From Marsupella aquatica (Eukaryota; Plantae; Marchantiophyta): a DNA stretch of 64,000 nucleotides. Positions 8,494 to 62,526 of this stretch are shown piece after piece. The notes beneath the pieces were generated by a model. It was not told where the DNA came from. It made no database searches and saw nothing but the letters and a program-made list of their open reading frames with translations. How positions within the stretch are numbered: position 1 is the stretch's first letter; the number at the start of each line of letters is the position of its first letter. The stretch spans positions 3,059,455 through 3,123,454 of the forward strand of contig OZ316899.1 in assembly GCA_973895155.1 (NCBI GenBank). The letters are read 5' to 3'. A program made the translations under genes and the position numbers.

Positions 8494-11322
8494 TTAGCAA
8501 CTGGTGAGAAGACCTCATTGTAATCCACACCTTTCTTTTGTGTGAATCCCTTTGCTACCAACCTAGCCTTGTAGACCTTTGATCCACTTCCTGCAGAATT
8601 ATCCTTCAGCTTGTAAATCCACTTGCTGTCCACCACTTGCTGACCCTTAGGCAGCTTAACAAGCTCCCAAGTTTTGTTGTCCTTTAGTGACTGCATCTCC
8701 GTTTGCATTGCTACAGTCCACTTCTGCTTCTCCTTTGAAGCACTTGCCTCATGAAATGAAGAAGGTTCCCCTTCTTCCAAAACCAACGCATCACCCTCAT
8801 CATCAGCTGTAAAATTGTCCTCTTGCAATTGAGATGAATCAACCCACTGTCCATACCTAGGAGGAGCGCGTACAGTGCGACCATATGTTCTTCTAGTCGA
8901 TGACTCCGGTTGAATTGCATCTACTGGTACAATTTGAAGCTCAGCAGCATCCACTTGCTGCTCACCAGCATCAACAAACTCCTCTTATTCCTCTGGCACA
9001 GGAACCAGCTCCATGCTTGGAGCACCTCCTTCTCTCCGATCATATACCTCATGATCAATCTCCCCCTCAACGAGATCCAGGATAGGAGATTTTCTTTTGT
9101 CAGTACGCGAGACCCGAGTATTCTCCCCCTCCTTCAATAATTTGGATTCATTGAAGGAAACATCCCTACTGACAACGAGCTTACAAGCAATAGGATCCCG
9201 TAGCCTGTAGGCCTTCACACCACTCTGATACCCAAGAAAAATACATTTCTTGGACGTAGGATCCAACTTGGTCCTATTCTGCTTTGGTGTGAGAGCATAT
9301 GACATCACTTCCAAAAACTACCAAGCCATGATAGTCTGCTTGCCGCTTATAACGCATTTCAAACAGCGTTTTGAAATTGATGGCACTAGAAGGAGAAAGA
9401 TTTACCAAATAAGCTGCAGCACTGACAGCTTCTGCCCAAAATTCTTGTGGTAAACCTGATTGGCTCAACATACTCCGTGACCGCTCCAACAGTGTTTGAT
9501 TGAGCCTCACAGCGACACCATTCTGTTGCGAAGTATAAATTGTGGTGAGATGGCGAGTTATCCCCTGTTCTGCACAGTACTCTTCAAATTCTATTGAAGT
9601 GTACTCCCCATCATTGTCTGACCTCAGACTCTTCACCCTTGTATCCAAACACTTAACCGTGTTTCCTGTCTGATTCTCCACTTGGGCCTTCCACTTTGTA
9701 AAAATGGACAAGACATCAGACTTATGCGTCATGAAATAAATCCATACAAATCTCAAGTAATCGTCAATAAATGATACATAGTACAATTTTCCAGAGTGTG
9801 AAGGAGTCGGGGATGGACCCCACACGTCACTATGTATGTACTCAAGAATCGCTTTGGAATAATGAGTTCCAACACCGAAAGCACAACGATGCTGCTTTCC
9901 AAAAATGCAATGCTCACAGAAATCCAATTTACAAGATTGCAAATCAAAAATGAGCCCATTCTTCCGCAAGATAGCCAATCCCTTCTCACTCATGTGGCCT
10001 AGCCGTGAATGCCATAGTTGAGTCATTTCCTCGTGAGACTTAGTTACATTGGTCTCTCCACATATTGTATTGCCTTGCAGCACATACAAATTCTTCTATC
10101 TGCTCCCCTTCAAAATCACTGCCTCTCCGGACATGACTTGAAGTTCACCATCAATTACTCACCATTGATGACCATTTGTATCCAACACACCGAGTGAAAT
10201 CAAATTCTTACGCATGCCAGGTACAAACCTGACTCCAGACACTGTGCGCACAATGTCATCAAATATTTGAATTTTTACAGACCCAATACCCTCAACTCGA
10301 TAGGATTGATCATTTCCCATCAAAACTGAACCGTTTGACACAGAATAAGAATTGAAATACTCGCAAATGTAACAAATATGAAAGGAGCAAGCACAATCAA
10401 GAATCCACACATTATTTTCTCTCCTAGATGATGTGCACAGCGGATACTCCTGACTTCATAAAACATACTCATCATTGAGTAAATCAACTTCTCCATCAGC
10501 ACTAGCCACATTGGCTGATGAAGATTCAGCTGCCTTACCCTTACAATCCCTCTTAACGTGACCAAGCTTCTGACACTTCCAGAAGACTATTGGCTTTCTC
10601 TCCTGGGACTTCCCCCTTGAAGCAAATCTTGCACTAGATTTACTTCTTCCCATGCCCTGCGTGCGTTGCTCTTGATGCTTTTGTAACCTCCCACGATTCA
10701 CATTCAAGGCAGCACCAGACGATGATGATGGCTGAGAGGGCATGGTCAATTTCTGCTACAAGTCATCAGTCAACAGAGCACTTACAACTTCATTGTAAGT
10801 GATAGTCTTCCTGTCACGATGAAGCAGCACTCATGACAATGACTGATACGATGAGGGTAAAGAGCTAAGCAAGTGAAGAGCTTGCCGCTCATCACTCAAC
10901 TCCTCCCCCAAATTTTGCAAATCAATGACTAGGTCGTTGAAACCATCGATATGGTCCTGAATCTTTGCACTTCCCTCCTTCATCTTGAAGCTCATAAGCT
11001 TCAAAGATGTGTAGAGCCGATTCGATAGCTCCTTTTGATGGTACTTTTGCTCCAACACGGCAAACAATGATGCACAATCGACATGGTCTGCCAACTGCTT
11101 GATGATATTAGGCTGAAGACAGAGCATCACGGTGCTCATAGCTTGCTCCTGCATGTCCTGCCAGTCATCATTGTCGACATCATTTGGCTGGTCCTTCAGC
11201 AATTTCCCAAGCCCGGTTGCATGGAGTACCCCCTTCACTTGTCGCTCCCACAACAAGTAGTTCGTGCGGCCATCGTATTTCGTAACCTCAAACTTGGGAC
11301 CTCCAAGCTTGATTGTCCCCAT
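8494..11322 (-). pseudogene. Copia gag-pol polyprotein, several stops and frameshifts
   Basis: gag 10831-11322 (KYDGRTNYLLW, ALHLLSSLPSSY). KCQKLGHVKRDC knuckle. WILDCACSFH protease. LWHSRLGHMSEKG, HSDVWGP, LRSDNDGEY, PQ-like QQNGVA integrase. YKARLVAKGFTQKKGVDYNEVFSPV RT start, truncated at 8494. Confidence 0.92.
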
Positions 11323-12816
11323 CCTTTCTCTTGTTACTCACCGCAATACCTATGACCACAATTCTGCTAGATCTTCCGCTTCCTCCTCTGTTCTCTCCGG
11401 TGACTCAACAGAACCCTCCTCCAAGTCACTCATGTGAGAAATCAAGAAAAAATGACATTTTTCTCAACTTCTCAAAAAACTCAAAAGTTATCACCGTCGT
11501 GTAGACCACGAGCCTATCTTTCCAAAGCTGAAAACCAACATCGAAACCGAACTCCGACGTAAAAGTTATTCACTTTTTGGTTGGGGTGGGTAAAACTTGG
11601 AATTCTCCCCCGTTTTGACCACCTCGGGGAATAACCAAAATGTGAACTAGTACCCGACGTTGGAAATGCAATTCAATTTGTGCACCGTGTTGCCAACTCC
11701 GATGGCTAGCAACTTGCCGAAGACGAACAAAAAAAGTTACCTTTCGACGGACGAAATCTTCAATGGACGGAAAAAAAATAGCTCTCTGGTTTTTTGGAAT
11801 ATTCTATGACCCTTGTACAGGCCCTGTGAGAATTTTGGAAGAACAATCAAGGGGCTGACACGTGTCCTCGAACCCCCAAAACCCCCTACCACCCTTCGTC
11901 GTCGAAATCTGGTCACACGCGCAAAAAATACACATGGTAGAATGTACCCCTCGACACCAAACACAAGATATCTCACTCGGGTTTTGACAAAATCAAGATC
12001 TGATTTCAGATTTGGAAACTAGACTCCAAGGCGGTGAAGATCAATATAAGAAGCACCCAAAATGAGGAAAGAACAAGGGAGACAAAAATTGGTAAAGATG
12101 ACAGATTTCTCTCAATTGCCATAGCCAATTTCGAATTAGTTTTTCAAAGAGAAAAAATGGTACCTTGTCAATAACGAATGTTGATGAATTGCACTTGGTG
12201 CCGTCACCAAGTCCAACAAGGTAATTGATTTTGCTTAGCCTTCCTCTTCGCATCAAAGAGCCAATCCCGGACTCAAAACAATCGTCTTGCCTCAATCTCT
12301 CCGTTGAGTCAAAACACTTGACGCTTCTCCCTCCGAGTCGATTGCCACGACAAGAAACCTCGCTCAGGAAAAAGAGGACTCCATAGCCGGTCAGAAAATC
12401 AGAATGTTTCTTTTGCTCGTCCCGTCGCACACGGTACTCACTTGGTAACAAATCAGCTACCAAAACAAATAGCTTGTCCGGATCTACAAGCAGAGCTATA
12501 GCATGCGATGCCTCCTTTGCCGTAGAGCTTACACCATCGAGAAAATAAACTCTGGTCCCTCCTCCGAAAAACCGTCAAACACGAATGTTGCCGACTTTCT
12601 TCACAAAATCCAGAACGACAAAAACTTAGATCTCTCCGCACCACGAGCTCCGTTCAACAATTTCTTCACACCGTTAGAAAGCTCTTGCCCCGATCTATCC
12701 GTTGAGCCCATAAACTCCAAGTTCCATACGATGGAACTCCGGGAAATCCACCGACACTCAACGTTGGAAAAACCGTCATGAAATCCCGTCACGAACACAC
12801 GTCACCTCCCATGCAT

Positions 12817-12828
12817 GCTCTGATACCA
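12817..12828 (-). promoter_or_regulatory. Primer-binding site, initiator tRNA-Met
   Basis: Plus gctctgatacca = minus TGGTATCAGAGC, 1 nt from the LTR end. Confidence 0.9.
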
Positions 12829-12829
12829 A

Positions 12830-13138
12830 TGGTTGAGCATAGACGACAATTGCAACGGTAAGCACATGACACATCCAACGCGCAAGTAGTCGACACAAGA
12901 GATACATGGTTCACCTCCTTGAGGCTACGTCCACGGGAACACACAAGAGAGCTTTACTGAACTCTAAGCCCATCGGCTATACCAAGTCTCCATAGTGTAA
13001 GCTCTCCTCATCTCTCAAGTGGCCCCATAACAATGAGCCTAAGTTTTACTTATCCAAGCAAACACCGCTTGGCATATAGAGTGCATCCTAGTTAACCTAA
13101 CCACATCTCCGACTATGGTTTGTCTAACTATGGTTATA
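12830..13138 (-). repeat. Copia 5' LTR (outer boundary uncertain; probably interrupted at 13138)
   Basis: Starts at TG next to the PBS. The partner LTR is outside the window, so the outer end cannot be fixed by comparison. Confidence 0.55.
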
Positions 13139-14208
13139 TGTCGTAACCCTAGACCTTGAGTAAATACCTAACAGTCTTGGGTCGGGTGTTCGGGGTATTG
13201 CCAAAGGGTTTGTCATTGCAGTTGTGATTTTTCGATCAGTCCAAGCGCCATGCTGCCCTAAGTGTATACACTCTTGCCATCCTGAGCACCTCACGCGAGC
13301 TGTGAGCAGTTGCATCCTCCTGTTGTAAGTGCATTGATCTGCCAAGCGTTCAAATGCGAAGCTACTAGCGTCTACTCCCCATGCTGGTTGAATGTCTAGC
13401 GCTACCCTATGATGATTGAAGATTGCCCCTTACCTTTTACCGCCATCGCTGAATGCAGGATCGACCCAAATATAGCACCTATGCAGAGGCATTGGGTGAA
13501 CATAGTGAATGCCATTTGTGACTTGTGCAAGGTTGTGGGCCGAACGTTCGTGAGTCGTGAGCTGCAGACTACATGCAACTGCAAAGGAGGCATTGGGGAG
13601 GACGCAGTGAAGCAACAAGGAGTGGAGCGGGAGCTTAGAGTGGGCCAATGCTAGCTGAATCCAATCCAGGAGTTGTTGCGCTAAGGTGAGACTTTGAGTT
13701 TAGGGTTGCTTTAGTGTCCGAGTAGGTTTTCTCTTTGCGTCGGCAGCTAGAAGGTAAGCTCGGGGGCTTTACAAAGGGTTAGTGTTGCAGACTTTCCCTC
13801 CTGAACGTTGCGTGCCTTCATTTGAAACTTGTTTGTGGACCTGTAATCCTGAGACTGTCAAAATTCTTGTGGCCGCACCGACAACTTGACGACGCATTTT
13901 GTGGATGCACCGTTAGTAATTGCGAGACAGTACAGCTCTCCAACAATTGCACTTACCATTTTTGACCACCTTGCATGATGTCCATCCATGGGCTGGACCC
14001 CAGGAAGTAGATTTTGGTAGATTTTGTCTTTGCCCTCGGTCCTCATTTTGTGCAATGTCCGCGTGACACTTGGTTCTTGATCCCTACATTGTCGTCTGCC
14101 GCTCGGCTGCTTGCAGAAGGGATCAAACAGATTGGAGGTGCTTGGTCTTGACATTCATTTTGGGTTTCAGAGTTTAGGAGGACAGCTTGCACCATCGCCG
14201 ACAAGAAT

Positions 14209-17137: not shown

Positions 17138-17640
17138 TTAATCATGATCATTAATTTCAAACTTGATGAACCATCATGACATCCACGCCTTGGGGGCCTC
17201 AGTATACAGAGCCCCCATATCACGCTCGACGTTTTGGACCCTTGCACCCCTAACTTATTAAGTAAAATATAAATTTCCCCTTCCCTATCATACTTATAAG
17301 AATTCCAAATCCTAACATTTTGACCCCTAAAAATTGTTAAGTAAAGTTTTGTTGTGAATTAAACACCCCTTAGTAAGAAAAGAAAAGTTCATTCAAATGC
17401 ACACCTTATTTGGGTCTTCGTCAAGCTTATTTGAACCCTAATGTGCTCCTTAGGCATCCATATCTCATGGGAAACTGATAGTATATAGTGTTAATGCTTC
17501 CACTAAGAATACCAATTCTAGTAGAAGCTTCAGCAATATACAGTATGAGTTATTCATATTGCAATCTATTGCGCTTGTCTGATGTGAAAGGTAGGTACAC
17601 CAAAAAGGAATTGAGTCAAGAATCTGGAATGGTGAGTGTA

Positions 17641-17701
17641 TGTGGCAGAGGGGAATTGAACCCCTGATTGAGCAAGAAGCTCAAGTATCCAAATCTGCCA
17701 C
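17641..17701 (-). ncRNA. tRNA-like three-stem structure lacking a D-arm (not a canonical tRNA)
   Basis: Minus strand: GTGGCAG-ATTTGGATAC-TTGAGC-TTCTT-GCTCAA-TC-AGGGG-TTCAATT-CCCCT-CTGCCAC-A. All three stems are perfectly paired and the T-loop resembles a B-box. Confidence 0.45.
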
Positions 17702-17772
17702 CCCTAGCCTATTCCCCTAACCTATCCCCTATACATACTAAAACCACTACCATGACTATTGATGCATGAAAA

Positions 17773-20700
17773 TCATTCAACTCTAGACATGGTCTCCAAA
17801 TAAGTATCCAAAGCTTGTTTATCAACTCGATCTAACACATACACTAAACCAATCCCTTGTTTCATGGTTAGAGTAACATTAGTCATCACCATTTCTATAT
17901 CAATCCATTGTAAATCAGTTGTATCATAAGTGAATTCAACTTTGCTTGAGCTTGTTGGCTTATACCAATTGAACAAGAACTGACAAATACTCCCTACGTG
18001 TCCATGAGGAGGTGTTGGTCTGTCAAGCAAATCAATAGCAGATCTCACTCTAGTCCATTGTCCCTTAACTTTTTGTCTCGTCATCATAATCCGACCAAGC
18101 CAAAATTCTTTCTTTGCTTGCACTACTGGCTCTTGAATCCTAGATTTACCTCTTCCTTTACCTTTCCCATTTTTTGATCTTGTAGAAGGGCCTGCATCAT
18201 TAGCACTTTCAAATGCTACTCCACAATCACTCCCAACATCAACAAAACAAGTCACAGTATTTGGATCACATTGTTTCCTCTTACCAAGATTATAGTATGC
18301 CACTTGTTTCACCCTTGTCAGCCTATCTTTAAACAAATGAGGGTCGCCCACTAGTTGACTCACCAAAGTTGATTTGTAAATTGTTCTGCCCTCATATGTA
18401 ACTGTAGGCAAAACCTTCTTCTTTTCTTGTAGAGGGCTCTGAAAAGACTGTGTAAACTCAACTACAACAGAAGACAGCACATGACGAACCTCATGCCCCA
18501 AAGTATCTACCTCCACAGAATGAGGTTATGGTATGTCTAACTCAACCCCATCCTGCAAAACATCATCAGGTTTGGTTAGCTCATCTGTCAACCATGCATC
18601 AATTCAATTTAGATCTTCCTCAGGGTCTTCAAATTCATGAAAATCTCCTTCTGGACGACGTCCAATTGGAGATCTATGCTCTACATGCTCTTCAGAATCA
18701 TCAACAATAACTGCCTCTGCTATTATAGTTGAATTTGGCCATGTCTGAACTTCCACATCCCAAGGGTGAGTCCACCATCGCTTTCTTGTTGCTGGCAAAT
18801 CACTTATGGGAGACATTTGTAACCTTCTAAGAAGCTCTCTTGCTTCTTCAAAACCTTCTTTCAAGGCTGCAACCACCAACTCATTAGTTTGCACTTCAGA
18901 GTAATAAAAAAGATTAGGTGCATCTTCACCTTCAAGTAAAGGATGAAGCTTGGCCCATACATGATCTTGCTTTTTATGTGATCGAGCTACTTTCAAGCCC
19001 TCTGGTCCACATTCTAATCCAACAAGACAATTTAACCCAACAGCATTGTCCAGCAAGGAGCCAAAATCATAATTCCTCTCATGGCCACTCATTCCACCTA
19101 CTTTGCTGAAAAATATCTCACAACAATCAGAACCTAACTCATGAAATGGAATACACAAGTGAGAAAACTTATCACGAAATGCACATATAAGCAAATACAG
19201 TAAACTGACATGACATGTTAACATCATGAAAAGCTTGGATTTATATCATATTTCTCTCTGTATGTGAAGCAACATTTCCACCTACAGCATGATCACCATA
19301 CCTCAACCACAACCTCCACAATCGAAAGAACCAAGAAACTTTACCTGCCAGCTTCACTCTAGTCCTCAGGTCATGTCTCTTGGAGTAGAAAATGTCAATA
19401 TAGTCTGCACAGATCTGCAGATACAACTCTGTCCCCAAACTTCATTCATGCAACAGATCAATTCTTCCATGCAAATCTGCTAAACAGTCACGCACCTTTT
19501 CTGATGCTATCCTTTGGGGACCAGCCCAGTTTTGACGGTCGGATCTGTTCACATCATCCCAATTCAATCCATGTTGATGGATTGGATAGTTATTGTACAC
19601 ATTACAAACATGAAATAGGGAAGTATGTTGGTCTCCAAGTGCCATTATTGAGGACACTCAATCTAGTGGGTTAATCAACTTTTTCCCATTGTGAGGCTGG
19701 TCTTGATCACCAAACCATACAGGTCCCCATTAGGCAATATGGCAACTGAGTAAGGCCATCCTTCCCACCCTACAGAAAATCTAGGGTAAGAGCCATTTGC
19801 TCCTCTGTAGTCTTCTAACATCAATTTCTTGCATCTTGCATCACCATCACTAGCATGCCCAAGCAAAGGACCTACAGAGTCTCTGCAATGCACATCCCAG
19901 GATTCCTTCAATTGCACCCAATGCTCTCTAACCCATTCTGCCTTGAATTTGTTACAGGTTGATATAGCACAGGGGCCAACTTTGGCATTCCAACATGCAA
20001 TGGATTCACAATGACAACTCTAGCATACATGCCCTTGTTAAAATCCTCAAATTTATTTACAATCTTGTTATAGCCATCCTCACCGTCACCTACAAGAATT
20101 TCTAATCCAAATTCACAGGTGTGCTCATCCTTATGGCCACAAAAACCAATCAGAGTGTCATATTTGGCCTCCCACTTGCAAACAGCCCAATGACAATGAA
20201 GTCAGTTCCAAAGAGTTGGTAGAAGTAGTTACATGCCTCACAAATAGTCTTCAACTCCAATTACATCATTATGTGCTATAATATACAAACATACCTTGGG
20301 CTTTCTTTGATTCTGGTTTCATCCTCTGCAAGCATGATAGGTACATCCCCCTGAATTCCCAACATCTCCTTTGTAGCAGACAGAATCTGAGCCACTTCCT
20401 TAAATGTTTCTGGCCTGATTCCAGCACAAAATTGAACAAACTTTGCTCTATCTTGATTTAGTGTCTTCAGGCTTGGCCCAACTAAGTTCCTTGCAAACAC
20501 ATGGGCCACTTGTCGGCCCCCATATTGAAACATAGCCTGAGCTATGGCTTTTGTTGTCTGACTGTAGCTAAACCCCCTTGCACTTCTCTCCAAATTTCTA
20601 CCTACATCCTTCAAGAAATCCCAAAGACCTTATTTTCCACCAAATGCACCATTCCTATGACCATTGACAATACTCCTTAGAAAAAGTCTCAAATATTTTC

Positions 20701-22336
20701 TGTCTGCAGCTACTCCTAACAATTTCTGCAATTTTCTCTTCCTAGTACTAAGGGCACACACTTTCTGAGTCTGTAGTGCCAACAACCATGTCTTTTTTCT
20801 TCTCTTGACATTCAGACCATGCATCTATGTGGTCAACTCTAGACGTGTCAAATAACGTGCATTCAAACCATCCTCTGTGCTTCTTTCCCCTCTCTTTGCT
20901 AAAGCCTCCGCTTCCTTGTGCACCCGCCCACGAAAGTCATCTTCTAGTGTTATAACATGACATCTACTACAAGTTAGGTTTAGAAACCCCCCACCATACA
21001 AGGACAGCCTAGAGCAATCTCTATGCCTAACTAGTCCTTTTATATGTACAATAGAACTTGTGTTAGGATTGTAGACATCAACAGAGACTGCAACATCTAA
21101 ATCCCATACATGTCCACCACGTTGATCATGCAAGATACCCTTCACATTCTTCCACTCTACATATTCATCCCATATTCCCCAACAGAGCAAACTTAAGCCC
21201 ACATCAATGTCAATAGACCCACCTGTACCAGAGCTATTGCTTGCATTGGAAACATCCTCGAAGAATTTTAAAATTGAATTCTGTGAAGGATGTTGATCCC
21301 TCTCATCTGGCTTCCTTGGTCTGCCCCTCTTTCCAGATCTCAATGCAAGTTCAACAGTATTCTCTCTGGCTTCAACTACATCCAGGTGACCCCGACTGAC
21401 CAAATGTGTCCTCAGGTTGTGGTCCAAAGTTCATTTCTTACAAACCAAATCCATGACTGCCCCACAAACTTTACAATGAACCTTATAATGGAACCACTTG
21501 TTTGCATTATTGGCTACACCTGGCACAAGGGGCACATGAAATAGCTCATCATCACCTCCACACTCAGCATTTAGAGTCTGGACTATCTCTAGGCCAGTTG
21601 TTATGGCCCCCTCATAATCAAACTCAGGCTTTTGTGCAAGATCTGTAGGCTTGACCCCAATCATAGCAATGCCCCTTCTCCTGTAGTAATTGTCTTTGTG
21701 TTTAGCAAAGACAAGGTGCTTGGTCTTAAAATTGCTAAACAAATTAGCAATTGACTTCTTATCTTGGGAATTGTCTACCCTCCCATAGACCACTTTGCAC
21801 TCAAGACACTCCAAATGGCCTCTCACATCCTGTCCTTCATCCCAAGTTTGAATTCTCCAATTATGAGCTTTATAACCATTCTTGTGAATCCACTTCTCTA
21901 GTCTTATATATTCATCATTCCAGACTTTGACAGCCGCCTGAGACATGAGAAGAGACTCAAAAGAAGCTCTCATAGGGGGAGCTTCTTGCAGTTGTTTACC
22001 CTGGGAAGAGTCCACTCCAACCGATTGGGTGACAGGAGTAGAAACTGATGGAAACTCTGTCTTGGCAGTATGCAAGGATCCAATTTGTTCAATGACAGCA
22101 ACTTTCCCATCCAATTCAGAAAACTCAGTCATTTTCTCACTCTTGACCTTCATGCGACCAGGAAGCCTATAATCCCAGAAATCAAAATCAAAATCAACCA
22201 AATCAGGAATTCGACTTCGAAAATCAGCTAAAGTTTGTCCTTCTTTGAAGGCCAACACAGCTATAGGTTCTTCATCTTTCCCATCAGTCACCACACCCCT
22301 TTTCTTGTGCAACAGTTTTACAAATTGGGTAGCCAT
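17773..22336 (-). pseudogene. P-element-superfamily (THAP9/P-like) DDE transposase, multiply disabled
   Basis: IMLAEDETRIK (about 20300-20340), HASDGD (about 19845), DQPHNGKKLINPL (about 19660-19705; DxxHxxKxxxN motif), DRQNW, and GSDCCEIFFS (about 19110-19140; cf. SQDxLExFF), in the expected order. Confidence 0.7.
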
Positions 22337-22687
22337 TTCAATCAATTTGTTAAAGTTAAAGTATGAAGGGGTTCTGAAAACAATCACAGTCACACAATGA
22401 ACCTGCCACACAACACAATAAACAAAACAATATGAAGCATATTAGACATTACTCCAAAGTACTTGTTGAACATAGTTCACATATAATTAGTCCAGTGAAT
22501 AAGTTTGCTCTACCAAAGCATTTCTACCAAACTCAGAAACTCTAAGAGGTATGTGGCTGTGCAGGAACCAATTCCCCCTTAGGTATTGCACGCCTATGAC
22601 AATAAATGAAACGCCACCCTTCCACATCCCAGTGGTCCCTGCCCTTCACACACCTCCTGAGGTGTTTCACCCCCCAGGTGTCTCATC

Positions 22688-23447
22688 ATGACACCAACTG
22701 CGAGGGCACCTTCAACACTGTACAAAGTCTTTAATGCCATCCTTGTACACTTTACAATACTCACAAAAATGCCTTGGGCACATTAGGTTGTTTGGACTTG
22801 CTGGATGAGACCTATGAGGCAGTGCCCCAACCTGAAGTAGCACCCTAAGGCAGCCAGGATGGTAATGAGAAAAGCAATGAGGGTGGGCACAATGGAGCAC
22901 AAGGGATTCCTGTGTTGTGGGATGTTCAAATCTGCCAATGAGTCCACAAGCAAAGCATCTAGCTCTGTTGGCAGCACACAATTCACAAACCCATGGTGCC
23001 CTCCAATCATTGTTTTTAGGCAATGTGACAGGAGTGCAAGCATGCCCTTGCATACCTTTTCCACCAACAAAGTGAAAATGTCTACTACAAGGCCCATCAC
23101 AAAAGATGACATCATCCTTGGGGGGTTAACTAAGTGTATTTTTTGGGGTACCACGTGCGATCCTAGCCTAATATAAATAGGCCTATTTTATAAAGAAAAT
23201 ATTCCAAGAATATTCTCTATTTTCAATATTAATAACCTATTTTACTTTATAAAGGGTATATATTAAAGAATATTCTATAAATATGAGTTTATAATACCTT
23301 CTTTTGCCTCTTACGCTTTTAAAAAATTTAGTTAAAATCTGCCAAAAATACCTATTTTGGATCGCACGTGGTTCCTAAGATTTTTGATAGTCAAGCCCCC
23401 GAGACATCATCTGTCTCATCACAAAAGAAACAGCAAGGGGGATCCAT
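22688..23447 (-). pseudogene. EDM2/NSD-type tandem PHD-like zinc-finger array, split by a MITE and one TGA
   Basis: Removing 23117-23402 plus one TSD copy gives CCFFCDETDDVIFCDGPCSRHFH...C...WVCELC...CFACG...HCAHPHCFSHYHPGC...CPRHFCEYC...QC*RCPRSWCH. Confidence 0.8.
23117..23402. mobile_element. 286-bp MITE with a 9-bp TSD (Mutator-like)
   Basis: GACATCATC at 23108-16 and 23403-11. Imperfect TIRs of about 45 bp with core gg.accacgtgcgatcc / ggatcgcacgtggttcc. AT-rich interior. Confidence 0.85.
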
Positions 23448-24879
23448 GCGGTGGTGCTCCGTATGGGAAAATATGTCAATCCTTGGCACATCAAAAGCCA
23501 TCTCAACTTGTTGGATAGTGATTTACCTCTGCAAAACAGATGCATCCACTCGGCATCCATTTTACATCCCCTCAACATCCATTCTACATTGATAGCATCC
23601 TGAACATAAGCATACCTTTAATCTCTGATGTGATAAGAGATGCAACAACTTACTGGTGATAGTTGATTGAGGTTTTCTCCTTCCACAATTTTTGAATGTG
23701 AACCCTGACTGTATATTGTTGAAGCTTCTGAAATGCTTCCACTACACCCGCAACAAATCCATCCTGCAAGAAGAGTTGAGTTAGCATATTAATTTATGAA
23801 GAGCTGACTATTTGAGCTGAAGGAAATAAACTGAAGCCAGGTTCATTCCTGCTGGAAAATGATTGCTTGAAGGAGTTTAAATAGAAAAAGGAAGACACAG
23901 GCACATGAAGATCTACAATAAACCATCCAATAAAACAAAATACACAAGAAGAAGAAGGAACGGTAGCAAACTTTTACAGACAGTACACAATTCCAGTCAT
24001 GCATGGAAATCTGGATATAAAGTTAAGCAGGGAATCAAACTAGCCATTCAAGTAACTGAGTCAAAATTTAACATACCTTGGCAACTACTGGTACGTTCTA
24101 GATTATAGACTTTAAACAGATCAAAACAAGCTGCACTTTCCTCTTATTGGACAGCTGCACAACACAGTGCAACCCAGTGCCATATGAATGTCAATCAAAG
24201 CCTTTGCTTTTCGAGTATAAATCATTTCAATCACCATTCATAAGGCAGATCAGTCATTACAAAGTTTCCAATGCTCAACATTGTATTTGAATGAGTTACT
24301 TAGTGAGAGTCTCAGACAAGTGACTTCGACAGCCTATATAGAGAGAGCCACGGCAGCTGTTGCTAATCGAGGGCACTACGAATGCTTCACATTATGCATC
24401 TGGAGGACCTTCTGGAAGAGATTATTAAGATCTGTGTACTGATTGTCTACACTATGACAATATTCCTATGCTTCACTCTCTAGATCTTGTAATCACCCTC
24501 AATCACAGCAGGCCAATCACAGCAGCCTGATACAAAATCGCCCCCTGATCAAGACTGTGCTTGATGGAAGCAAGGAGCGCAAACAAAGAGAGGAGCTCAA
24601 TTGAAGCTTCACGATTGGAGGAAGCAGCTTGATGGGCAGCTCAATTGAAGCCGGGAGGAGCTCGAGAAGAAGGAAAGAGCTCAAACTGGGGCTCAAACGA
24701 AAGGAGGAAACTCAATTCATACTCAGCAATTGGAGAGAGCAGAAATCACTTGACTGCAAGCAAAGTCTATAGAAGAAGAATAGCAGGGAGAAACTGAGCA
24801 AAATAGAATGGGCCGACAGCATTTTGGCTCCAAGATTTCAAATACCTCTTGAGTTGGAATTGCAAAGATGATTTGTGCT

Positions 24880-59720: not shown

Positions 59721-62526
59721 TCACAATGGTGGTAGGCCGCTTTGCTTATGATAGCTTCCAAGGATCTCTGAGGCATTACCCAAATTTTCCTCCGGTTCCC
59801 AAGTACTCTCGGCCTGATCGTAGCCAGCCCACTTCACCAAATACTCTAAGATTTGCCTTCCCAACTTGCGTTTGTAACGGTGGTCCAGAATTGCCTCCAC
59901 CTCAAACTCCTCAGCGTCCTCCACCAGCATGGCGTTCGGACGCAAGACCTGATCCCGGTTGGGATCATCATCTTTGACAAACTTCTTGAGCCGGCTAACA
60001 TGGTAGCTTTTGCCCACGCCCATTTCCTTGGGTGTCTCTAACACCACCAAAACCGGATTATCCTTGTGGGCCCATCGTATAATGCAATACGGCCCCGCAT
60101 ATCTGGGAGCCAGCTTCCTACTTATGTTCCAGTGGTATTGCTCAGGTCTCAATTGCAACCAGACGCTCTCCCCAATTTCAAAGCTTACCTGGCGTCAATG
60201 TTTATCCCCTTGCTCCTTGTACCGACTTTGGGCAAGGGTCATACCCTTGGTAGCCGCTTCCACAACTAGGTGTCGCTCTTGAATAAAATCATCCGTGGAA
60301 GGAACCTTGCTTTTCGTCTGCCAAGCTTCCGGATTTATAAACCAGGAGGGCGCCCTTGGCGTCCTCCCTGTGGCCAACACAAACGGCGCAAACCCCATTG
60401 CCGAATGCTTGGTCGAGTTATACCTAAACTCGACCATCGTTAAGTGCCTTGCCCAATCCTTTTGATTGGCCGTCACAAAGTGACGCAAGTAGTCCTCCAC
60501 GATACCATTAACCCGTTCCATTTGGCCATCTGTCTCATGATGATACGTTGATCCCCTAGTCAGGTCCGTTCCGGATAACCAAAACAACGCATTCCAGAAA
60601 TGGCCCGTGAACTTGGTATCGCGATCGGACAGGATATGCAACGGCAATCCCCACTGTCGAAAGACATTGTCAAACACTAGACCGGCGACCTCTTGGGTCG
60701 AAACCATCTTCATAGTAGGCAGGAAATACGCCATCTTGGAAAAACGATCCACAATTGTTAAGATGGAGTTACTGCCATGGGATTCAGGTAACCCAACAAT
60801 GAAGTCCATGGAGATAGACTCCCATGGAGCCGCAGCTACTGGTAAGGGTTGTAGCAGTCCTCCTTTTGCCCTATAGACCGTTTGGTTCTTTTGGCATGAG
60901 TAACAACTTTGCATGTATTGAAGGACCAATTGCTTCATGTCCGACCAATACACATCTCGCGACATGCTACGATACATAGCAGCTTGTCCTCCATGCCCCT
61001 CCCCAGGGCAAGCCGTGGTACTTTTGCAAAACCTCTAACCTTAGAGACTCTGGTATGTACACACGCCTTTGCTTGTATCGCCATAATTGGACATTATGCG
61101 CCTTATCCAACCCCAATGATACGTGCCTTACCTTGCCTTGGCTACCCCCATTGCTTTGCCATTCCTTAGCTAACCTGTCATCCCCATATGCCGCGGCTAG
61201 AACCTTTGGCCACTCGGATTTGAGCATCGTGATCCCATTGACACGATGTTGGTCCTTACGCGATAACGCGTCCGCTGCCGTATTTGTCTTCCCTGGAATG
61301 TGGCGGACTTCGAAATCAAAATCCGCCAAGAACATCTGCCAGCGCATTTCCTTGGGGTTCAGCCTTGGCTTAGAACTGAAGTACCCGGTCGGCGAGCTAT
61401 CTGTGTGGATTACCACGTTGGGACTGTTCTTAAGGTAAATCTCCCACTTCTTCAATGCATATATCACAACATATATTTCCCTTTCCGGCGTGATCCAGTG
61501 ATTTTCCAACTTACATGACTCAAAGGCCACAGGACGCCCATCTTGGTGAAGACAGGCGCCGATGGTATAATCACTTGCGTCTGTTAAAATCTTGAATGGC
61601 TTCCCCATCTCAGGTAACTTTAGAACCGACGGCGTTATCATTAGCCGCTTAAGCTCTAGGAATGCTAACTCGCAATCCCGTGTCCACACAAACACTTTGT
61701 TTTTCAACGTTAGCGCGTTTAGGGGCCTCGCAATCCTTGCATAGTCTTTCATGTATCTCCGATAGAACCCCGTAAATCCTAAGAAGGCTCTAACTTGCCT
61801 TACATTGGACGGGCGCTCCCATTCTTTGATCTCCTTAAGCTTGTCCTGACTAGGCGTAATCCCTTCCGGGGTAAAGGTATGGCCGAGGAACTGAATCTCG
61901 TTCATCGCAAACTTGCACTTGCTAGGTTTAGCAAAGAGACGAGCCTTACGAAGGCGAGAGAACACTTCTCTGAGCAACTGCTCATGTTCCTCCAACGTTT
62001 TCGAGTAGATTAGGATGTTGTCAATAAAGACGACCACTCCTTGGTCCAACAAGTCATGAAAGATGGTATTCATCATCTTCATGAACATTGCGGTTGCGTT
62101 ACACAACCCGAACGGCATAACCAAAAACTCATAGGATACAAACCTTGTGCGCATCGCAATCTTATACTCGTCTCTCTTAGCCATGCGGATCTGGTAATAC
62201 CCAGACCGCAAGTCCACCTTTGAAAACTTCTTAGCCCCGGAGAGGCAATCGAAGAGGTCATCCATATGAGGTAACAATGGGTACTTGTTCTTTATCATTT
62301 GCTTATTGAGCGCCCGCTAATCTGCGCACAATCTCAAAGTACCATCCTTTTTGGACACAAATAGCGCGGGCGCCGCCGCGTAAGGACTCTTACTAGGGCA
62401 AATGAACCCTTGGTCGATCAACTCTTCCAAGGCGTTCTTCAACATCATTCGCTTGTTCAGGTTCAAGCGATAAGGAGCTTTAGCCTGAGGAGCCAAACCT
62501 GGCTCCAACTCAACTTGGTGATTCAC
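59721..62526 (-). pseudogene. Gypsy pol: RT, RNase H, integrase (GPY) and chromodomain; disabled
   Basis: PSKSPYAA, KVDLRSGYYQIR, MPFGLCNA, FIDN in place of YxDD, TDASD, PWESISMDFIVGLP, SDRD, ERVN, RYAGPY, and FEVEAILDHR...YLVKWAGY...TWEPEENL. Stops and frameshifts near 62317, 60970 and 60195. Confidence 0.93.

What the first reader, a model, noticed from the sequence alone, without database searches (positions are those of the whole stretch)
22688..23447. EDM2/NSD-type PHD histone-reader array directly upstream of the transposase
Excising the MITE and one TSD copy restores an open frame with the Cys/His spacing of the tandem PHD-like fingers of Arabidopsis EDM2 and NSD methyltransferases (C..C...CDG.C...FH...C...C..C / CF.CG...C....C...YH..C / CP.H.C..C...C(R)RCP). 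It is co-oriented and ends about 350 bp before the transposase ATG. EDM2 PHDs read H3K9me2-containing marks and control processing of transcripts with intronic heterochromatin. A DNA transposon carrying such a reader could use it for target choice or to evade silencing (inference).
Basis: partly seen in the sequence, partly recalled or inferred. Interest (0 to 1): 0.72.

Follow-up and report, generated by a model that had tools for sequence, protein, structure and literature searches.

The report
Transposon-borne EDM2-type PHD reader gene
A cut-and-paste transposon family of liverworts carries, ahead of its transposase gene, its own small gene for an EDM2/NSD-type histone-tail reader that has been kept by selection; the copy in this window is a broken relic of it.

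Summary
On the minus strand there is a three-finger EDM2/NSD-type PHD module. Pfam PHD_NSD scores 33 bits against a cut-off of 24.

It is a complete small gene, not a loose array. It runs from the ATG at 23501 to the TAG at 22544-22542 and would encode about 221 aa. This copy is dead: a 286-bp MITE with a 9-bp target duplication, a CGA>TGA stop, a 1-bp deletion and a lost zinc-binding His.

It is not a host pseudogene fragment. Two other diverged copies (L001, about 80% nt; L010, 56% aa) show the same order, PHD gene then the same transposase gene. L001 also shares the terminal repeat outside the PHD gene. Contigs from three organisms cover the PHD gene and the transposase alike. dN/dS between the window and L001 is 0.15 (p=5e-10). 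An intact 226-aa relative (P0011) folds like the NSD PHD5-C5HCH histone-H3 binders.

Every copy has its own start and stop codons, so two genes are likelier than a spliced fusion.

The transposase is blank in Pfam and PDB but resembles P-element/THAP9 by language-model features. More distant relatives (Riccia, JGI contigs) lack the PHD gene, so it was acquired within the lineage.

Function (integration targeting or anti-silencing) remains inference.

The scan has noted EDM2-type PHD genes on other DNA of this genome before, there assigned to CACTA elements.

The parts
22542..23501 (-). Decayed stand-alone PHD reader gene (about 221 codons once the MITE is left out), from ATG 23501 to TAG 22544-22542
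   Evidence: Start (MAFDVPRIDIFSH..MDPPCCF) and stop positions are conserved in L001, L010 and intact P0011. Pfam PHD_NSD 33.2 bits.
23403..23501 (-). N-terminus and first half of PHD finger 1 (C-x2-C)
   Evidence: Translation; 84% nt identity to L001 with dN/dS 0.09.
23117..23402 (.). 286-bp MITE inserted into PHD finger 1. The 9-bp target duplication GATGATGTC lies at 23108-23116 and 23403-23411.
   Evidence: Inverted ends and direct repeats. Empty-site joints 23108>23404 and 23104>23408 in other copies. Very high contig depth.
22715..23107 (-). Second half of finger 1 (CDGPC..FH..C-x2-C), finger 2 (PHD_NSD) and first half of finger 3 (CPRH-C-x2-C ... QC)
   Evidence: Pfam; alignment of zinc ligands with host EDM2 proteins.
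22712..22714 (-). Premature stop TGA at an Arg codon (QC-R-RCP in other copies)
   Evidence: L001, L010 and P0011 have R here.
22668..22670 (-). Site of a 1-bp deletion (frameshift) within finger 3
   Evidence: The frame switches between ..DETPGG and KHLRRC... Other copies carry one extra base at 22669/22670 (table 4). L001 is continuous here.
22545..22667 (-). End of finger 3 (W..FIYC-x2-H, with H replaced by R in this copy) and the short C-terminal tail
   Evidence: Alignment; dN/dS 0.06 against L001.
22337..22541 (-). Non-coding spacer between the PHD gene stop and the transposase ATG
   Evidence: Not conserved at protein level between copies; 77% nt identity to L001 with indels. L010 has a spacer of about 300 nt.
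17773..22336 (-). Transposase gene (several exons or frames), distantly P-element/THAP9-like
   Evidence: Colinear homologs in L002-L008. Named relatives in Calypogeia fissa and Riccia sorocarpa. Atlas features point to PF21787/PF12017 for the N core and PF21789/PF22824 for the C part. No Pfam or PDB sequence hit.
23701..23738 (-). 5' terminal inverted repeat of the element, lying outside the PHD gene. The arm is 23701-23729; conservation with L001 continues to 23738.
   Evidence: Inverted repeat with 17523-17551, 29 nt, 86%. L001 positions 1-27 match 23738-23712 at 96%, while the next 170 nt do not align. A contig of run X1 ends at 23740.
17523..17551 (+). 3' terminal inverted repeat arm (candidate)

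Best explanation
The finding is a dead copy of a two-gene DNA transposon about 6.2 kb long (roughly 17523-23738, minus strand).

Gene 1 is a small stand-alone gene of about 221-226 aa. It consists only of an EDM2/NSD-type triple PHD zinc-finger module. Gene 2 is the transposase, which is distantly P-element/THAP9-like.

The PHD gene is an integral, selected component of this transposon lineage in liverworts. It was acquired after the lineage split from PHD-less relatives.

Shown here: the domain type, the gene structure, its multi-copy state, its linkage to the transposase, purifying selection, and an NSD PHD5-C5HCH-like fold.

Inferred: the protein binds the histone H3 N-terminal tail in a methylation-state-dependent way, as EDM2 and NSD modules do, and works in trans as an accessory factor of the element. 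My rough odds:
- About 45%: it tethers the transposition complex to a chromatin state, for target choice or activation. The RAG2 PHD does this for RAG1, and chromodomains do it for chromoviral integrases.
- About 35%: it occupies silencing marks on the element, or mimics EDM2 there, to keep the element transcribed.
- The rest: some other role.
For: Domain type:
- Pfam PHD_NSD scores 33.2 bits against a cut-off of 23.9.
- The nearest non-self relatives are EDM2-family proteins.
- The AF2 model of intact P0011 has pLDDT 78. It matches NSD3/NSD2/NSD1 PHD5-C5HCH at Foldseek probability 1.00 and target-normalised TM 0.65-0.70. VIA-align gives Z 6.3-6.6 over 87-96 of 90-98 residues, clearly above the next hits at Z 4.0-4.7.

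Stand-alone gene:
- The start and stop are conserved in the window, L001, L010 and P0011.
- The transposase has its own Met in each copy.
- None of the 61 hits scanned has a transposase domain.

Part of the element:
- The terminal repeat lies outside the PHD gene and is shared with L001.
- The order PHD gene then transposase gene is seen in the window, in L001 (77-84% nt identity) and in L010 (PHD 56% aa, transposase N-terminus 43% aa).
- Contigs of three organisms cover the PHD gene and the transposase, with similar numbers of contigs at variant sites. Contig records 11 and 17 bridge 22314-22647.

Selection: dN/dS is 0.15 over the PHD gene, with 38.5 synonymous and 35.5 non-synonymous differences (binomial p=5e-10).

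Acquisition: relatives of the transposase in Riccia sorocarpa (L008) and in JGI contigs (L002-L007) have no PHD gene upstream.
Against: - No RNA data. No listed run is on record as RNA, so transcript structure and expression are unknown.
- Histone binding is untested. The third finger departs from host EDM2: the host H-x2-C after CP.AW is replaced by C-H-D.
- P0011 misses the PHDvar_NSD model at E<=0.001.
- The element's exact ends and target duplication are not resolved.
- The transposase superfamily rests on language-model feature similarity and my own motif reading, not on an HMM or a structure. The AF2 model of P0005 reached only pLDDT 43.
- Linkage rests on three copies plus short contigs.
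- Depths from contigs are not copy numbers.
Confidence: 0.8

Rival explanations
1. The PHD module is the first exon or exons of the transposase, so the active element makes a single PHD-transposase fusion protein by splicing.
For: Same strand, only about 205 bp apart. A pyrimidine-rich tract ending in CAG lies at about 22404, upstream of the transposase ATG. In L001 a GAG|GTGGAA site lies just before the PHD stop. PHD fingers fused to transposases are known in Ginger1 and Rehavkus.
Against: The window, L001, L010 and P0011 all end the PHD frame with a stop at the same place, after a poorly conserved tail typical of a true C-terminus. The transposase keeps its own Met, and the sequence before it is not conserved as protein. 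The candidate donor is GG, not GT, in the window. None of the 61 scanned relatives of the PHD module carries a transposase domain.
Confidence: 0.1
2. The PHD sequence is a host EDM2-like pseudogene fragment, or a captured dead fragment, that merely lies next to the transposase.
For: This copy is broken four times. Plant DNA transposons often pick up host fragments.
Against: It is a complete small ORF with conserved ends. It lies inside the terminal repeat shared with L001. It is linked to the same transposase in copies as diverged as 56% aa. dN/dS is 0.15. An intact relative exists. In the tree it forms its own clade (support 96-97) outside the host EDM2 clades.
Confidence: 0.03
3. The partner transposase is not P-like. 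In that case the element would belong to the CACTA families that earlier notes of this scan found carrying EDM2-type PHD genes, or to another superfamily such as hAT. This would then be another copy of the same system.
For: Earlier notes describe 681-nt PHD genes at the head of CACTA elements in this genome. P0011's gene is also 681 nt. A CACTACACCC motif starts at 23740, just outside the element. No P-element HMM or PDB hit was found.
Against: No CACTA transposase family appears among the Pfam hits at E<=1 in any ORF here or in the more complete relatives. The inverted arms start AGAAGCTTCA, not CACTA. Two consecutive parts of the protein map by Atlas features to the matching N and C parts of P/THAP9 transposases. 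A separate stand-alone PHD clade (P0078/P0043/P0032, 24-28% identical) is followed by a faint BRCT-like ORF.
Confidence: 0.1

Closest known systems
PHD module of plant EDM2 (ENHANCED DOWNY MILDEW 2) and EDM2-like proteins
   Same: Same three-finger arrangement and zinc-ligand spacing. EDM2-family proteins are the best hits outside the gene's own clade (28-37% identity). [quoted passage not shown]
   Different: The transposon protein is only the PHD module (221-226 aa). It lacks the DNMT1-RFD-like and methyltransferase-like regions of the host proteins. It sits on a long branch outside the liverwort, moss and angiosperm EDM2 clades. The ligand pattern of the third finger is altered.
NSD1/2/3 PHD5-C5HCH tandem fingers (e.g. 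4GNG, 9GBF, 2NAA)
   Same: Best structural match of the intact relative. Pfam PHD_NSD family. NSD3 PHD5-C5HCH was crystallised with H3 and H3K9me3 peptides (entry titles).
   Different: No SET domain. About 30-34% identity over the aligned part. There is an extra N-terminal finger.
RAG2 PHD finger working with the RAG1 transposase-derived recombinase (ProtoRAG-type two-gene transposon)
   Same: Concept only, from my own knowledge: a transposase gene paired with a separate adjacent gene whose product carries a histone-tail-reading PHD finger that couples DNA cleavage to a chromatin state.
   Different: Unrelated transposase superfamily (Transib). A single canonical PHD at the end of a kelch-repeat protein. 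No homology was tested here.
PHD fingers inside transposases (Ginger1-9_HM; Rehavkus; some MULEs)
   Same: DNA transposons that encode a PHD finger (PMC2836005; PMC6446971).
   Different: There the finger is a single PHD fused to the transposase. Here it is a separate gene with an EDM2/NSD-type triple module.
VANC, the anti-silencing protein of VANDAL21/Hiun (Mutator) in Arabidopsis
   Same: An accessory gene of a plant DNA transposon that counters silencing (cited in PMC6446971). This is a model for the anti-silencing reading.
   Different: Unrelated protein. It is not a histone reader.
EDM2-type PHD genes on CACTA transposons noted earlier by this scan in the same genome
   Same: A small stand-alone EDM2-type triple-PHD gene at the head of a DNA transposon, reported as kept under selection (not checked by me).
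   Different: There the partner is a CACTA (TnpD) transposase with a BRCT gene in between. Here the partner looks P/THAP9-like and follows directly. The likely public counterpart of that cassette (P0078 and its neighbour in L013) is only 24-28% identical to the gene here.

Membership tests
NSD/EDM2-type tandem PHD module (Pfam PF22908 PHD_NSD, PF23011 PHD-1st_NSD, PF23004 PHDvar_NSD) | PHD_NSD profile above the curated cut-off | tested here: met
   Window piece 33.2 bits against 23.9. Intact relative P0011 26.2 bits.
NSD/EDM2-type tandem PHD module (Pfam PF22908 PHD_NSD, PF23011 PHD-1st_NSD, PF23004 PHDvar_NSD) | Three consecutive fingers with conserved Cys/His ligands | tested here: met
   Alignment with five host EDM2-family proteins: the ligand columns are conserved. 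Exceptions are the H-x2-C after CP.AW in finger 3 (C-H-D in the transposon clade) and the last His, which is lost in the window copy only.
NSD/EDM2-type tandem PHD module (Pfam PF22908 PHD_NSD, PF23011 PHD-1st_NSD, PF23004 PHDvar_NSD) | Variant third finger recognised by PHDvar_NSD | tested here: not met
   P0011 matches only PHD_NSD and PHD-1st_NSD at E<=0.001, whereas 55 of the 61 hits scanned match PHDvar_NSD.
NSD/EDM2-type tandem PHD module (Pfam PF22908 PHD_NSD, PF23011 PHD-1st_NSD, PF23004 PHDvar_NSD) | Fold of PHD5-C5HCH | tested here: met
   Model of P0011 (pLDDT 78) against 4GNG, 9GBF, 4GND and 2NAA: Foldseek probability 1.00; VIA Z 6.3-6.6, rmsd 2.8-3.3 over 87-96 residues.
NSD/EDM2-type tandem PHD module (Pfam PF22908 PHD_NSD, PF23011 PHD-1st_NSD, PF23004 PHDvar_NSD) | Binding of modified histone H3 tails | not testable with these tools
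   Needs peptide-binding assays on an intact family member.
Host EDM2 protein family | Full architecture (N-terminal RFD-like region, PHD module, methyltransferase-like region; 500-1600 aa) | tested here: not met
   The gene encodes 221-226 aa of PHD module only. 21 of the 61 hits scanned carry DNMT1-RFD; P0011 does not.
Host EDM2 protein family | Placement inside the host EDM2 clade of the same plant group | tested here: not met
   Own clade (support 96-97) on a stem of 1.4-1.8 changes per site, outside the liverwort, moss and angiosperm EDM2 groups.
P-element/THAP9 transposon superfamily (for the partner transposase) | Match to the P/THAP9 profiles (PF12017, PF21787, PF21788, PF21789) or to the solved P element transposase | tested here: not met
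   No Pfam hit at E<=1 on the window ORFs or on relatives. No PDB sequence hit, with either a single sequence or a profile.
P-element/THAP9 transposon superfamily (for the partner transposase) | Overall likeness of the catalytic core to P/THAP9 transposases | tested here: inconclusive
   Atlas features for the N core piece point to clusters with PF21787, PF12017 and PF21788 (score 0.93, recognition 2901). The C piece points to PF21789 and PF22824 (score 0.95, recognition 1889). I also read the motifs DE..I, DGD..R and GSD.CE.FFSKVGG in the sequence. The AF2 model was too poor for a fold test.
P-element/THAP9 transposon superfamily (for the partner transposase) | N-terminal THAP domain; terminal inverted repeats with an 8-bp target duplication | tested here: inconclusive
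   No THAP hit. Inverted arms of 29 nt were found. No 8-bp duplication could be identified; instead there is a 13-bp direct repeat, offset on the left side.
CACTA/EnSpm superfamily (for the partner transposase) | CACTA termini and a TnpD-type transposase (Pfam Transposase_21, DUF4218 and related families) | tested here: not met
   The arms begin AGAAGCTTCA. No such Pfam family appears at E<=1. The CACTACACCC motif at 23740 lies outside the element and points away from it.

The most novel reading that the evidence does not exclude
EDM2-type PHD-only reader genes may form a portable chromatin-reader cassette that has been passed between, or repeatedly recruited by, unrelated DNA-transposon superfamilies in liverworts: P/THAP9-like here, CACTA elsewhere in this genome. 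They would be maintained by selection as a general transposon tool for reading host heterochromatin marks, whether for integration targeting or for counter-silencing. In an unrooted tree, the seven short stand-alone PHD proteins fall on one side of a branch against 26 host EDM2-family proteins (SH-aLRT 91). These seven are the clade of this element, P0013, and the BRCT-adjacent clade P0032/P0043/P0078. That is compatible with a common transposon-borne origin, but also with long-branch attraction.
Probability: 0.3. Interest if true: 0.8.

Novelty: new variant of a known kind. Interest (0 to 1): 0.62.

Why it matters
Transposons are known to carry chromatin-directed parts: chromodomains in chromoviral integrases, the RAG2 PHD, single PHD fingers fused to Ginger or Rehavkus transposases, and the VANC anti-silencer.

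In the papers I could search, I found no report of a separate, selected gene made only of the triple PHD reader module of the host anti-silencing factor EDM2.

If the protein reads heterochromatin marks, there are two possibilities. It could be a transposon-encoded targeting subunit, or it could be a decoy against the host's H3K9me2-based silencing loop. Either would be a new handle on how DNA transposons deal with plant chromatin.

It would also give a compact natural reader for testing EDM2-type mark recognition.

The partner transposase also matters. It looks like a P/THAP9-type enzyme in land plants, where that superfamily is hardly described.

Tried and rejected
- Word-index search with the PHD piece found only one candidate, P0001. 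With the transposase N-terminal ORF it found none.
- PDB sequence searches with the PHD piece, two transposase ORFs and a 10-sequence profile were all blank.
- Pfam was blank on all transposase ORFs of the window and on relatives.
- The AF2 model of transposase fragment P0005, built with 10 sequences, reached only pLDDT 43. It was not used for a fold search.
- No second copy of the PHD gene, the transposase or the MITE lies inside the 64-kb window.
- P0003 (Calypogeia fissa) could not be located for context.
- The contigs of P0011 and P0032 are too short to show neighbouring genes.
- No PHD gene lies upstream of the transposase in L002 or L008, even at tblastn E<=50 or by inspecting Cys/His-rich ORFs.
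- The target duplication and exact termini of the element could not be settled.
- The findings index gave nothing by sequence.
- No RNA run was available, so a spliced fusion could not be tested.
Pieces were searched separately by reference. A read-through with X at the stop and at the frameshift was used only in local alignments and trees.
Full report
**What is in the sequence.** The feature lies on the minus strand.

Reading down from 23501, an ORF opens with MAFDVPRIDIFSHTEHHRMDPPCCFFCDETDDV. It is then cut by a 286-bp AT-rich insertion at 23117-23402.
- The insertion has imperfect inverted ends of about 42 nt.
- It is flanked by a 9-bp direct duplication, GATGATGTC, at 23108-23116 and 23403-23411.
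- This is a MITE with its target-site duplication.

Beyond the MITE the same frame continues: IFCDGPCSRHFH...CELC (rest of finger 1), CFACG...HCAHPHCFSHYHPGC (finger 2), then CPRHFCEYC...VQC.
- A TGA follows at 22714-22712, then RCPRSWCHDETPGG.
- A frameshift follows near 22669, then KHLRRC...WRFIYCHRR.
- The natural stop is TAG at 22544-22542.

Piece 23116-22715 matches Pfam PHD_NSD at 33.2 bits (cut-off 23.9, E=6.5e-8), with weaker PHD_4 and PHD-1st_NSD signals.

**The lesions, judged against other copies.** A Logan contig from another run (L001) aligns to 23738-23712, 23540-23406, 23104-22959, 22761-22540 and 22420-22238 at 77-96% identity.
- It lacks the MITE. It reads FFCDEIEDMVFCDGPC straight through the insertion site.
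- It has Arg where the window has TGA (QCRRCP).
- It is in one frame across the window's frameshift.
- It carries its own 197-bp deletion of finger 2.

Reads support the same points.
- Contigs of runs X2 and X3 show empty-site joints 23108>23404 (295 bp skipped, 8 ambiguous bases) and 23104>23408.
- Several contigs carry one extra base at 22669/22670.

The last zinc-binding His (YC-x2-H) is Arg only in the window copy. The window copy is therefore a relic with at least four disabling changes.

**It is a complete small gene.** The exhaustive search of 1.84 billion representatives with the 134-aa piece gave 70 hits.
- The best hit, P0011 (1.3e-46, 61% identity), is an intact 226-aa protein from a 681-nt gene on a JGI contig.
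- P0011 begins MANNVPLIDQFQHSEHFRMDPPCCF and ends shortly after the YC-x2-H motif. The window gene, L001 and a third copy, L010, do the same.

The conserved start, the conserved stop position and the poorly conserved last ten residues indicate a stand-alone protein of about 221-231 aa that consists only of the three fingers.

**It belongs to the transposon.**
1. An inverted repeat (17523-17551 and 23701-23729; 29 nt, 86%) brackets both the PHD gene and the transposase ORFs. L001 shares the right-hand terminus at 96%, although the next 170 nt do not align at all. That pattern is expected of a functional terminus.
2. L001 runs from that terminus through the PHD gene into the first 33 codons of the transposase.
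3. L010 is a much more diverged copy: PHD 56% aa, transposase N-terminus 43% aa. It has the same order, a PHD gene with a single internal stop, a spacer of about 300 nt, then the transposase ORF with its own Met.
4. Contigs from runs of three differently labelled organisms were laid at 80% or more identity. They cover the PHD gene and the transposase body with similar numbers of distinct contigs at variant sites. For example, 10/7/16 contigs at 22859 against 16/10/19 at 21997. Contig records 11 and 17 bridge 22314-22647. Coverage falls beyond about 23572. These are contigs, so I do not read the depths as copy numbers.
5. Between the window and L001 the PHD gene has 38.5 synonymous and 35.5 non-synonymous differences. 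That gives dN/dS 0.15, with binomial p=5e-10 for the excess of synonymous changes. Inserted copies decay neutrally, so this signal records selection on the active lineages.

It did not occur.

**Two genes rather than a fusion.** Every copy keeps the PHD stop and a separate transposase Met. The sequence between them is not conserved as protein. None of the 61 scanned relatives of the PHD module has a transposase domain. A spliced fusion cannot be excluded without RNA, and no RNA run was listed. I put it at about 10%.

**What kind of PHD it is.** After the gene's own clade (P0011, P0001, P0012), the best hits are EDM2-family proteins at 28-37% identity. They include:
- Riccia sorocarpa, Marchantia polymorpha and M. 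paleacea proteins;
- Calypogeia fissa proteins;
- Physcomitrium 'ENHANCED DOWNY MILDEW 2';
- Salvia, Triticum and Miscanthus EDM2-like proteins.

Of the 61 hits scanned, 57 carry PHD_NSD, 55 carry PHDvar_NSD and 21 carry DNMT1-RFD.

An AF2 model of P0011 reached pLDDT 78 and pTM 0.77.
- By Foldseek it matches NSD3, NSD2 and NSD1 PHD5-C5HCH tandem fingers best, at probability 1.00 and target-normalised TM 0.65-0.70.
- By VIA-align it scores Z 6.3-6.6 with rmsd 2.8-3.3 over 87-96 of 90-98 residues.
- The next hits score Z 4.7 (rice Ehd3 tandem PHD) and about 4.0 (single PHD fingers).

The NSD3 entries are complexes with H3 and H3K9me3 peptides. EDM2 is reported to bind H3K9me2 and to carry '2 1/2 atypical PHD fingers' (PMC7529245).

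In trees the transposon clade is well supported (96-97). It sits on a long stem outside the liverwort, moss and angiosperm EDM2 groups, so its donor cannot be named. Its third finger differs from host proteins: C-H-D replaces the host H-x2-C after CP.AW. P0011 also misses the PHDvar_NSD profile.

**The partner transposase.** The ORFs from 22336 down to 17773 have no Pfam family at E<=1 and no PDB sequence match.

The word search with the 207-aa ORF found relatives in two named species:
- Calypogeia fissa, 65% identity;
- Riccia sorocarpa, 41-55% identity.

It also found relatives in JGI contigs.

The JGI contigs (L002-L007) and Riccia (L008) carry the whole transposase colinearly. A profile of these relatives still finds nothing in PDB or Pfam.

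By language-model features, two consecutive parts of the protein point to the matching parts of P/THAP9 transposases.
- The N core piece is nearest to clusters with TNP-like_RNaseH_N, Tnp_P_element and TNP-like_GBD (score 0.93, recognition 2901).
- The C piece is nearest to clusters with TNP-like_RNaseH_C and THAP9_C (score 0.95, recognition 1889).

Motifs I can read in the sequence agree with this: AEDETRIK, GHA.DGD.R, and GSD.CEIFFSKVGG...ERNYDF. That part is my own knowledge, not a tool test.

No CACTA hallmark was found, in either the termini or the Pfam families. I therefore call the transposase 'distantly P/THAP9-like, unconfirmed'.

**When the PHD gene was gained.** The Riccia and JGI relatives (25-48% aa identity in the transposase) have no PHD gene upstream. 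This held even at tblastn E<=50 and on inspection of Cys/His-rich ORFs. The gene was therefore gained within the lineage that includes the window, L001 and L010, and it has been kept since those sublineages diverged to 43-57% aa identity.

**Relation to earlier notes of this scan.** EDM2-type PHD genes have been reported repeatedly on other DNA of this genome, there assigned to CACTA transposons. One note describes a cassette 'Cys-rich ORF > EDM2-PHD > tandem BRCT > TnpD'. I could not read those sequences.

In public data a second clade of short stand-alone PHD proteins exists (P0032, P0043, P0078).
- It is 24-28% identical to the gene here.
- One member is followed by an ORF with a faint BRCT_2 signal (E=0.08).
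- That may be the public counterpart of the CACTA cassette.

In an unrooted tree, all seven stand-alone proteins lie on one side of a branch against 26 host proteins (SH-aLRT 91). This hints at a shared transposon-borne origin but could be long-branch attraction.

**How it most likely works.**

Shown: a selected, stand-alone protein with an NSD PHD5-C5HCH-like fold, encoded as the first gene of the element.

Inferred: it binds the H3 tail in a mark-dependent way and serves the element in trans. It has no effector domain, so it can only bind or bridge. I slightly favour a tethering or targeting subunit of the transposition machinery (about 45%). This would be analogous to the RAG2 PHD with RAG1, or to chromodomains in chromoviral integrases. 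The alternative is a shield or EDM2 mimic that keeps the element's chromatin transcribed (about 35%). Nothing here separates the two.

**Literature.** PHD fingers fused to transposases are known in Ginger1-9_HM and some MULEs (PMC2836005) and in Rehavkus (PMC6446971). My searches found no report of an EDM2-type PHD-only gene carried by a transposon. The library is incomplete, so this is absence of evidence only.

**Limits.**
- The element's exact ends and target duplication are unresolved. L001 shares 9 bases beyond the right arm, and these have no inverted partner on the left.
- A 13-bp direct repeat, AATGCTTCCACTA, lies at 17484-17496 and 23732-23744.
- Expression is unknown.
- Linkage rests on three sequenced copies plus short contigs.
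Pieces were searched by reference, and X marked the breaks in local alignments only.

Noticed in passing
window 23117-23402: A 286-bp MITE with imperfect inverted ends of about 42 nt (GGGGG(C/G)TT(G/A)ACTA ... CCACGTGCGATCC) and a 9-bp target duplication. It is by far the most abundant sequence of the stretch in runs X1-X3, with 75-95 contigs at one variant site. The 9-bp duplication suggests a Mutator-type origin, which is my inference.
   Followed up: partly
window 17484-17496 and 23732-23744: A 13-bp direct repeat, AATGCTTCCACTA, flanks the element. It is too long for a P-type 8-bp duplication, and on the left it lies 26 bp from the inverted arm. A CACTACACCCGCAAC motif begins at 23740, pointing rightwards. 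It could be the terminus of a neighbouring CACTA element.
   Followed up: partly
L008 (Riccia sorocarpa CM100796.1) 9626-14152; L002 7597-11827 and L003-L007: Full-length, PHD-less relatives of the transposase in Riccia sorocarpa and in JGI metagenome contigs. The same 326-aa product was seen on 14 contigs from several samples. These would be useful for classifying this Pfam-blank transposase family.
   Followed up: partly
L013 232-969 and 1322-1891: A second, distantly related stand-alone PHD gene (P0078, 245 aa), followed by an ORF with a faint BRCT_2 signal. It comes from a run of the same accession series as L001 and L010. It is possibly the CACTA-type cassette described in earlier notes.
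   Followed up: partly
L012 10001-11744 (Marchantia polymorpha AP019869.1): Marchantia gene Mp4g03050 (P0042, 280 aa) is a short, intron-containing protein that has little beyond the EDM2-type PHD module. No other gene is called within about 8.5 kb on either side. It may be a host PHD-only paralogue.
   Followed up: no
window 9274-11322 (-) and 60195-62298 (-): Retrotransposon coding remnants. Gag/integrase-like ORFs of copia type lie at 9274-11322, identified by reading only. RT, RNase H and integrase of Ty3/gypsy type lie at 60195-62298, identified by Pfam.
   Followed up: no
window 18641 > 23804 (run X3): One contig joins 18641 to 23804, skipping 5162 bp, with only 29 nt on the shorter side. 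If real, it would be a deletion derivative whose end lies beyond the right inverted arm. The evidence is weak.
   Followed up: no
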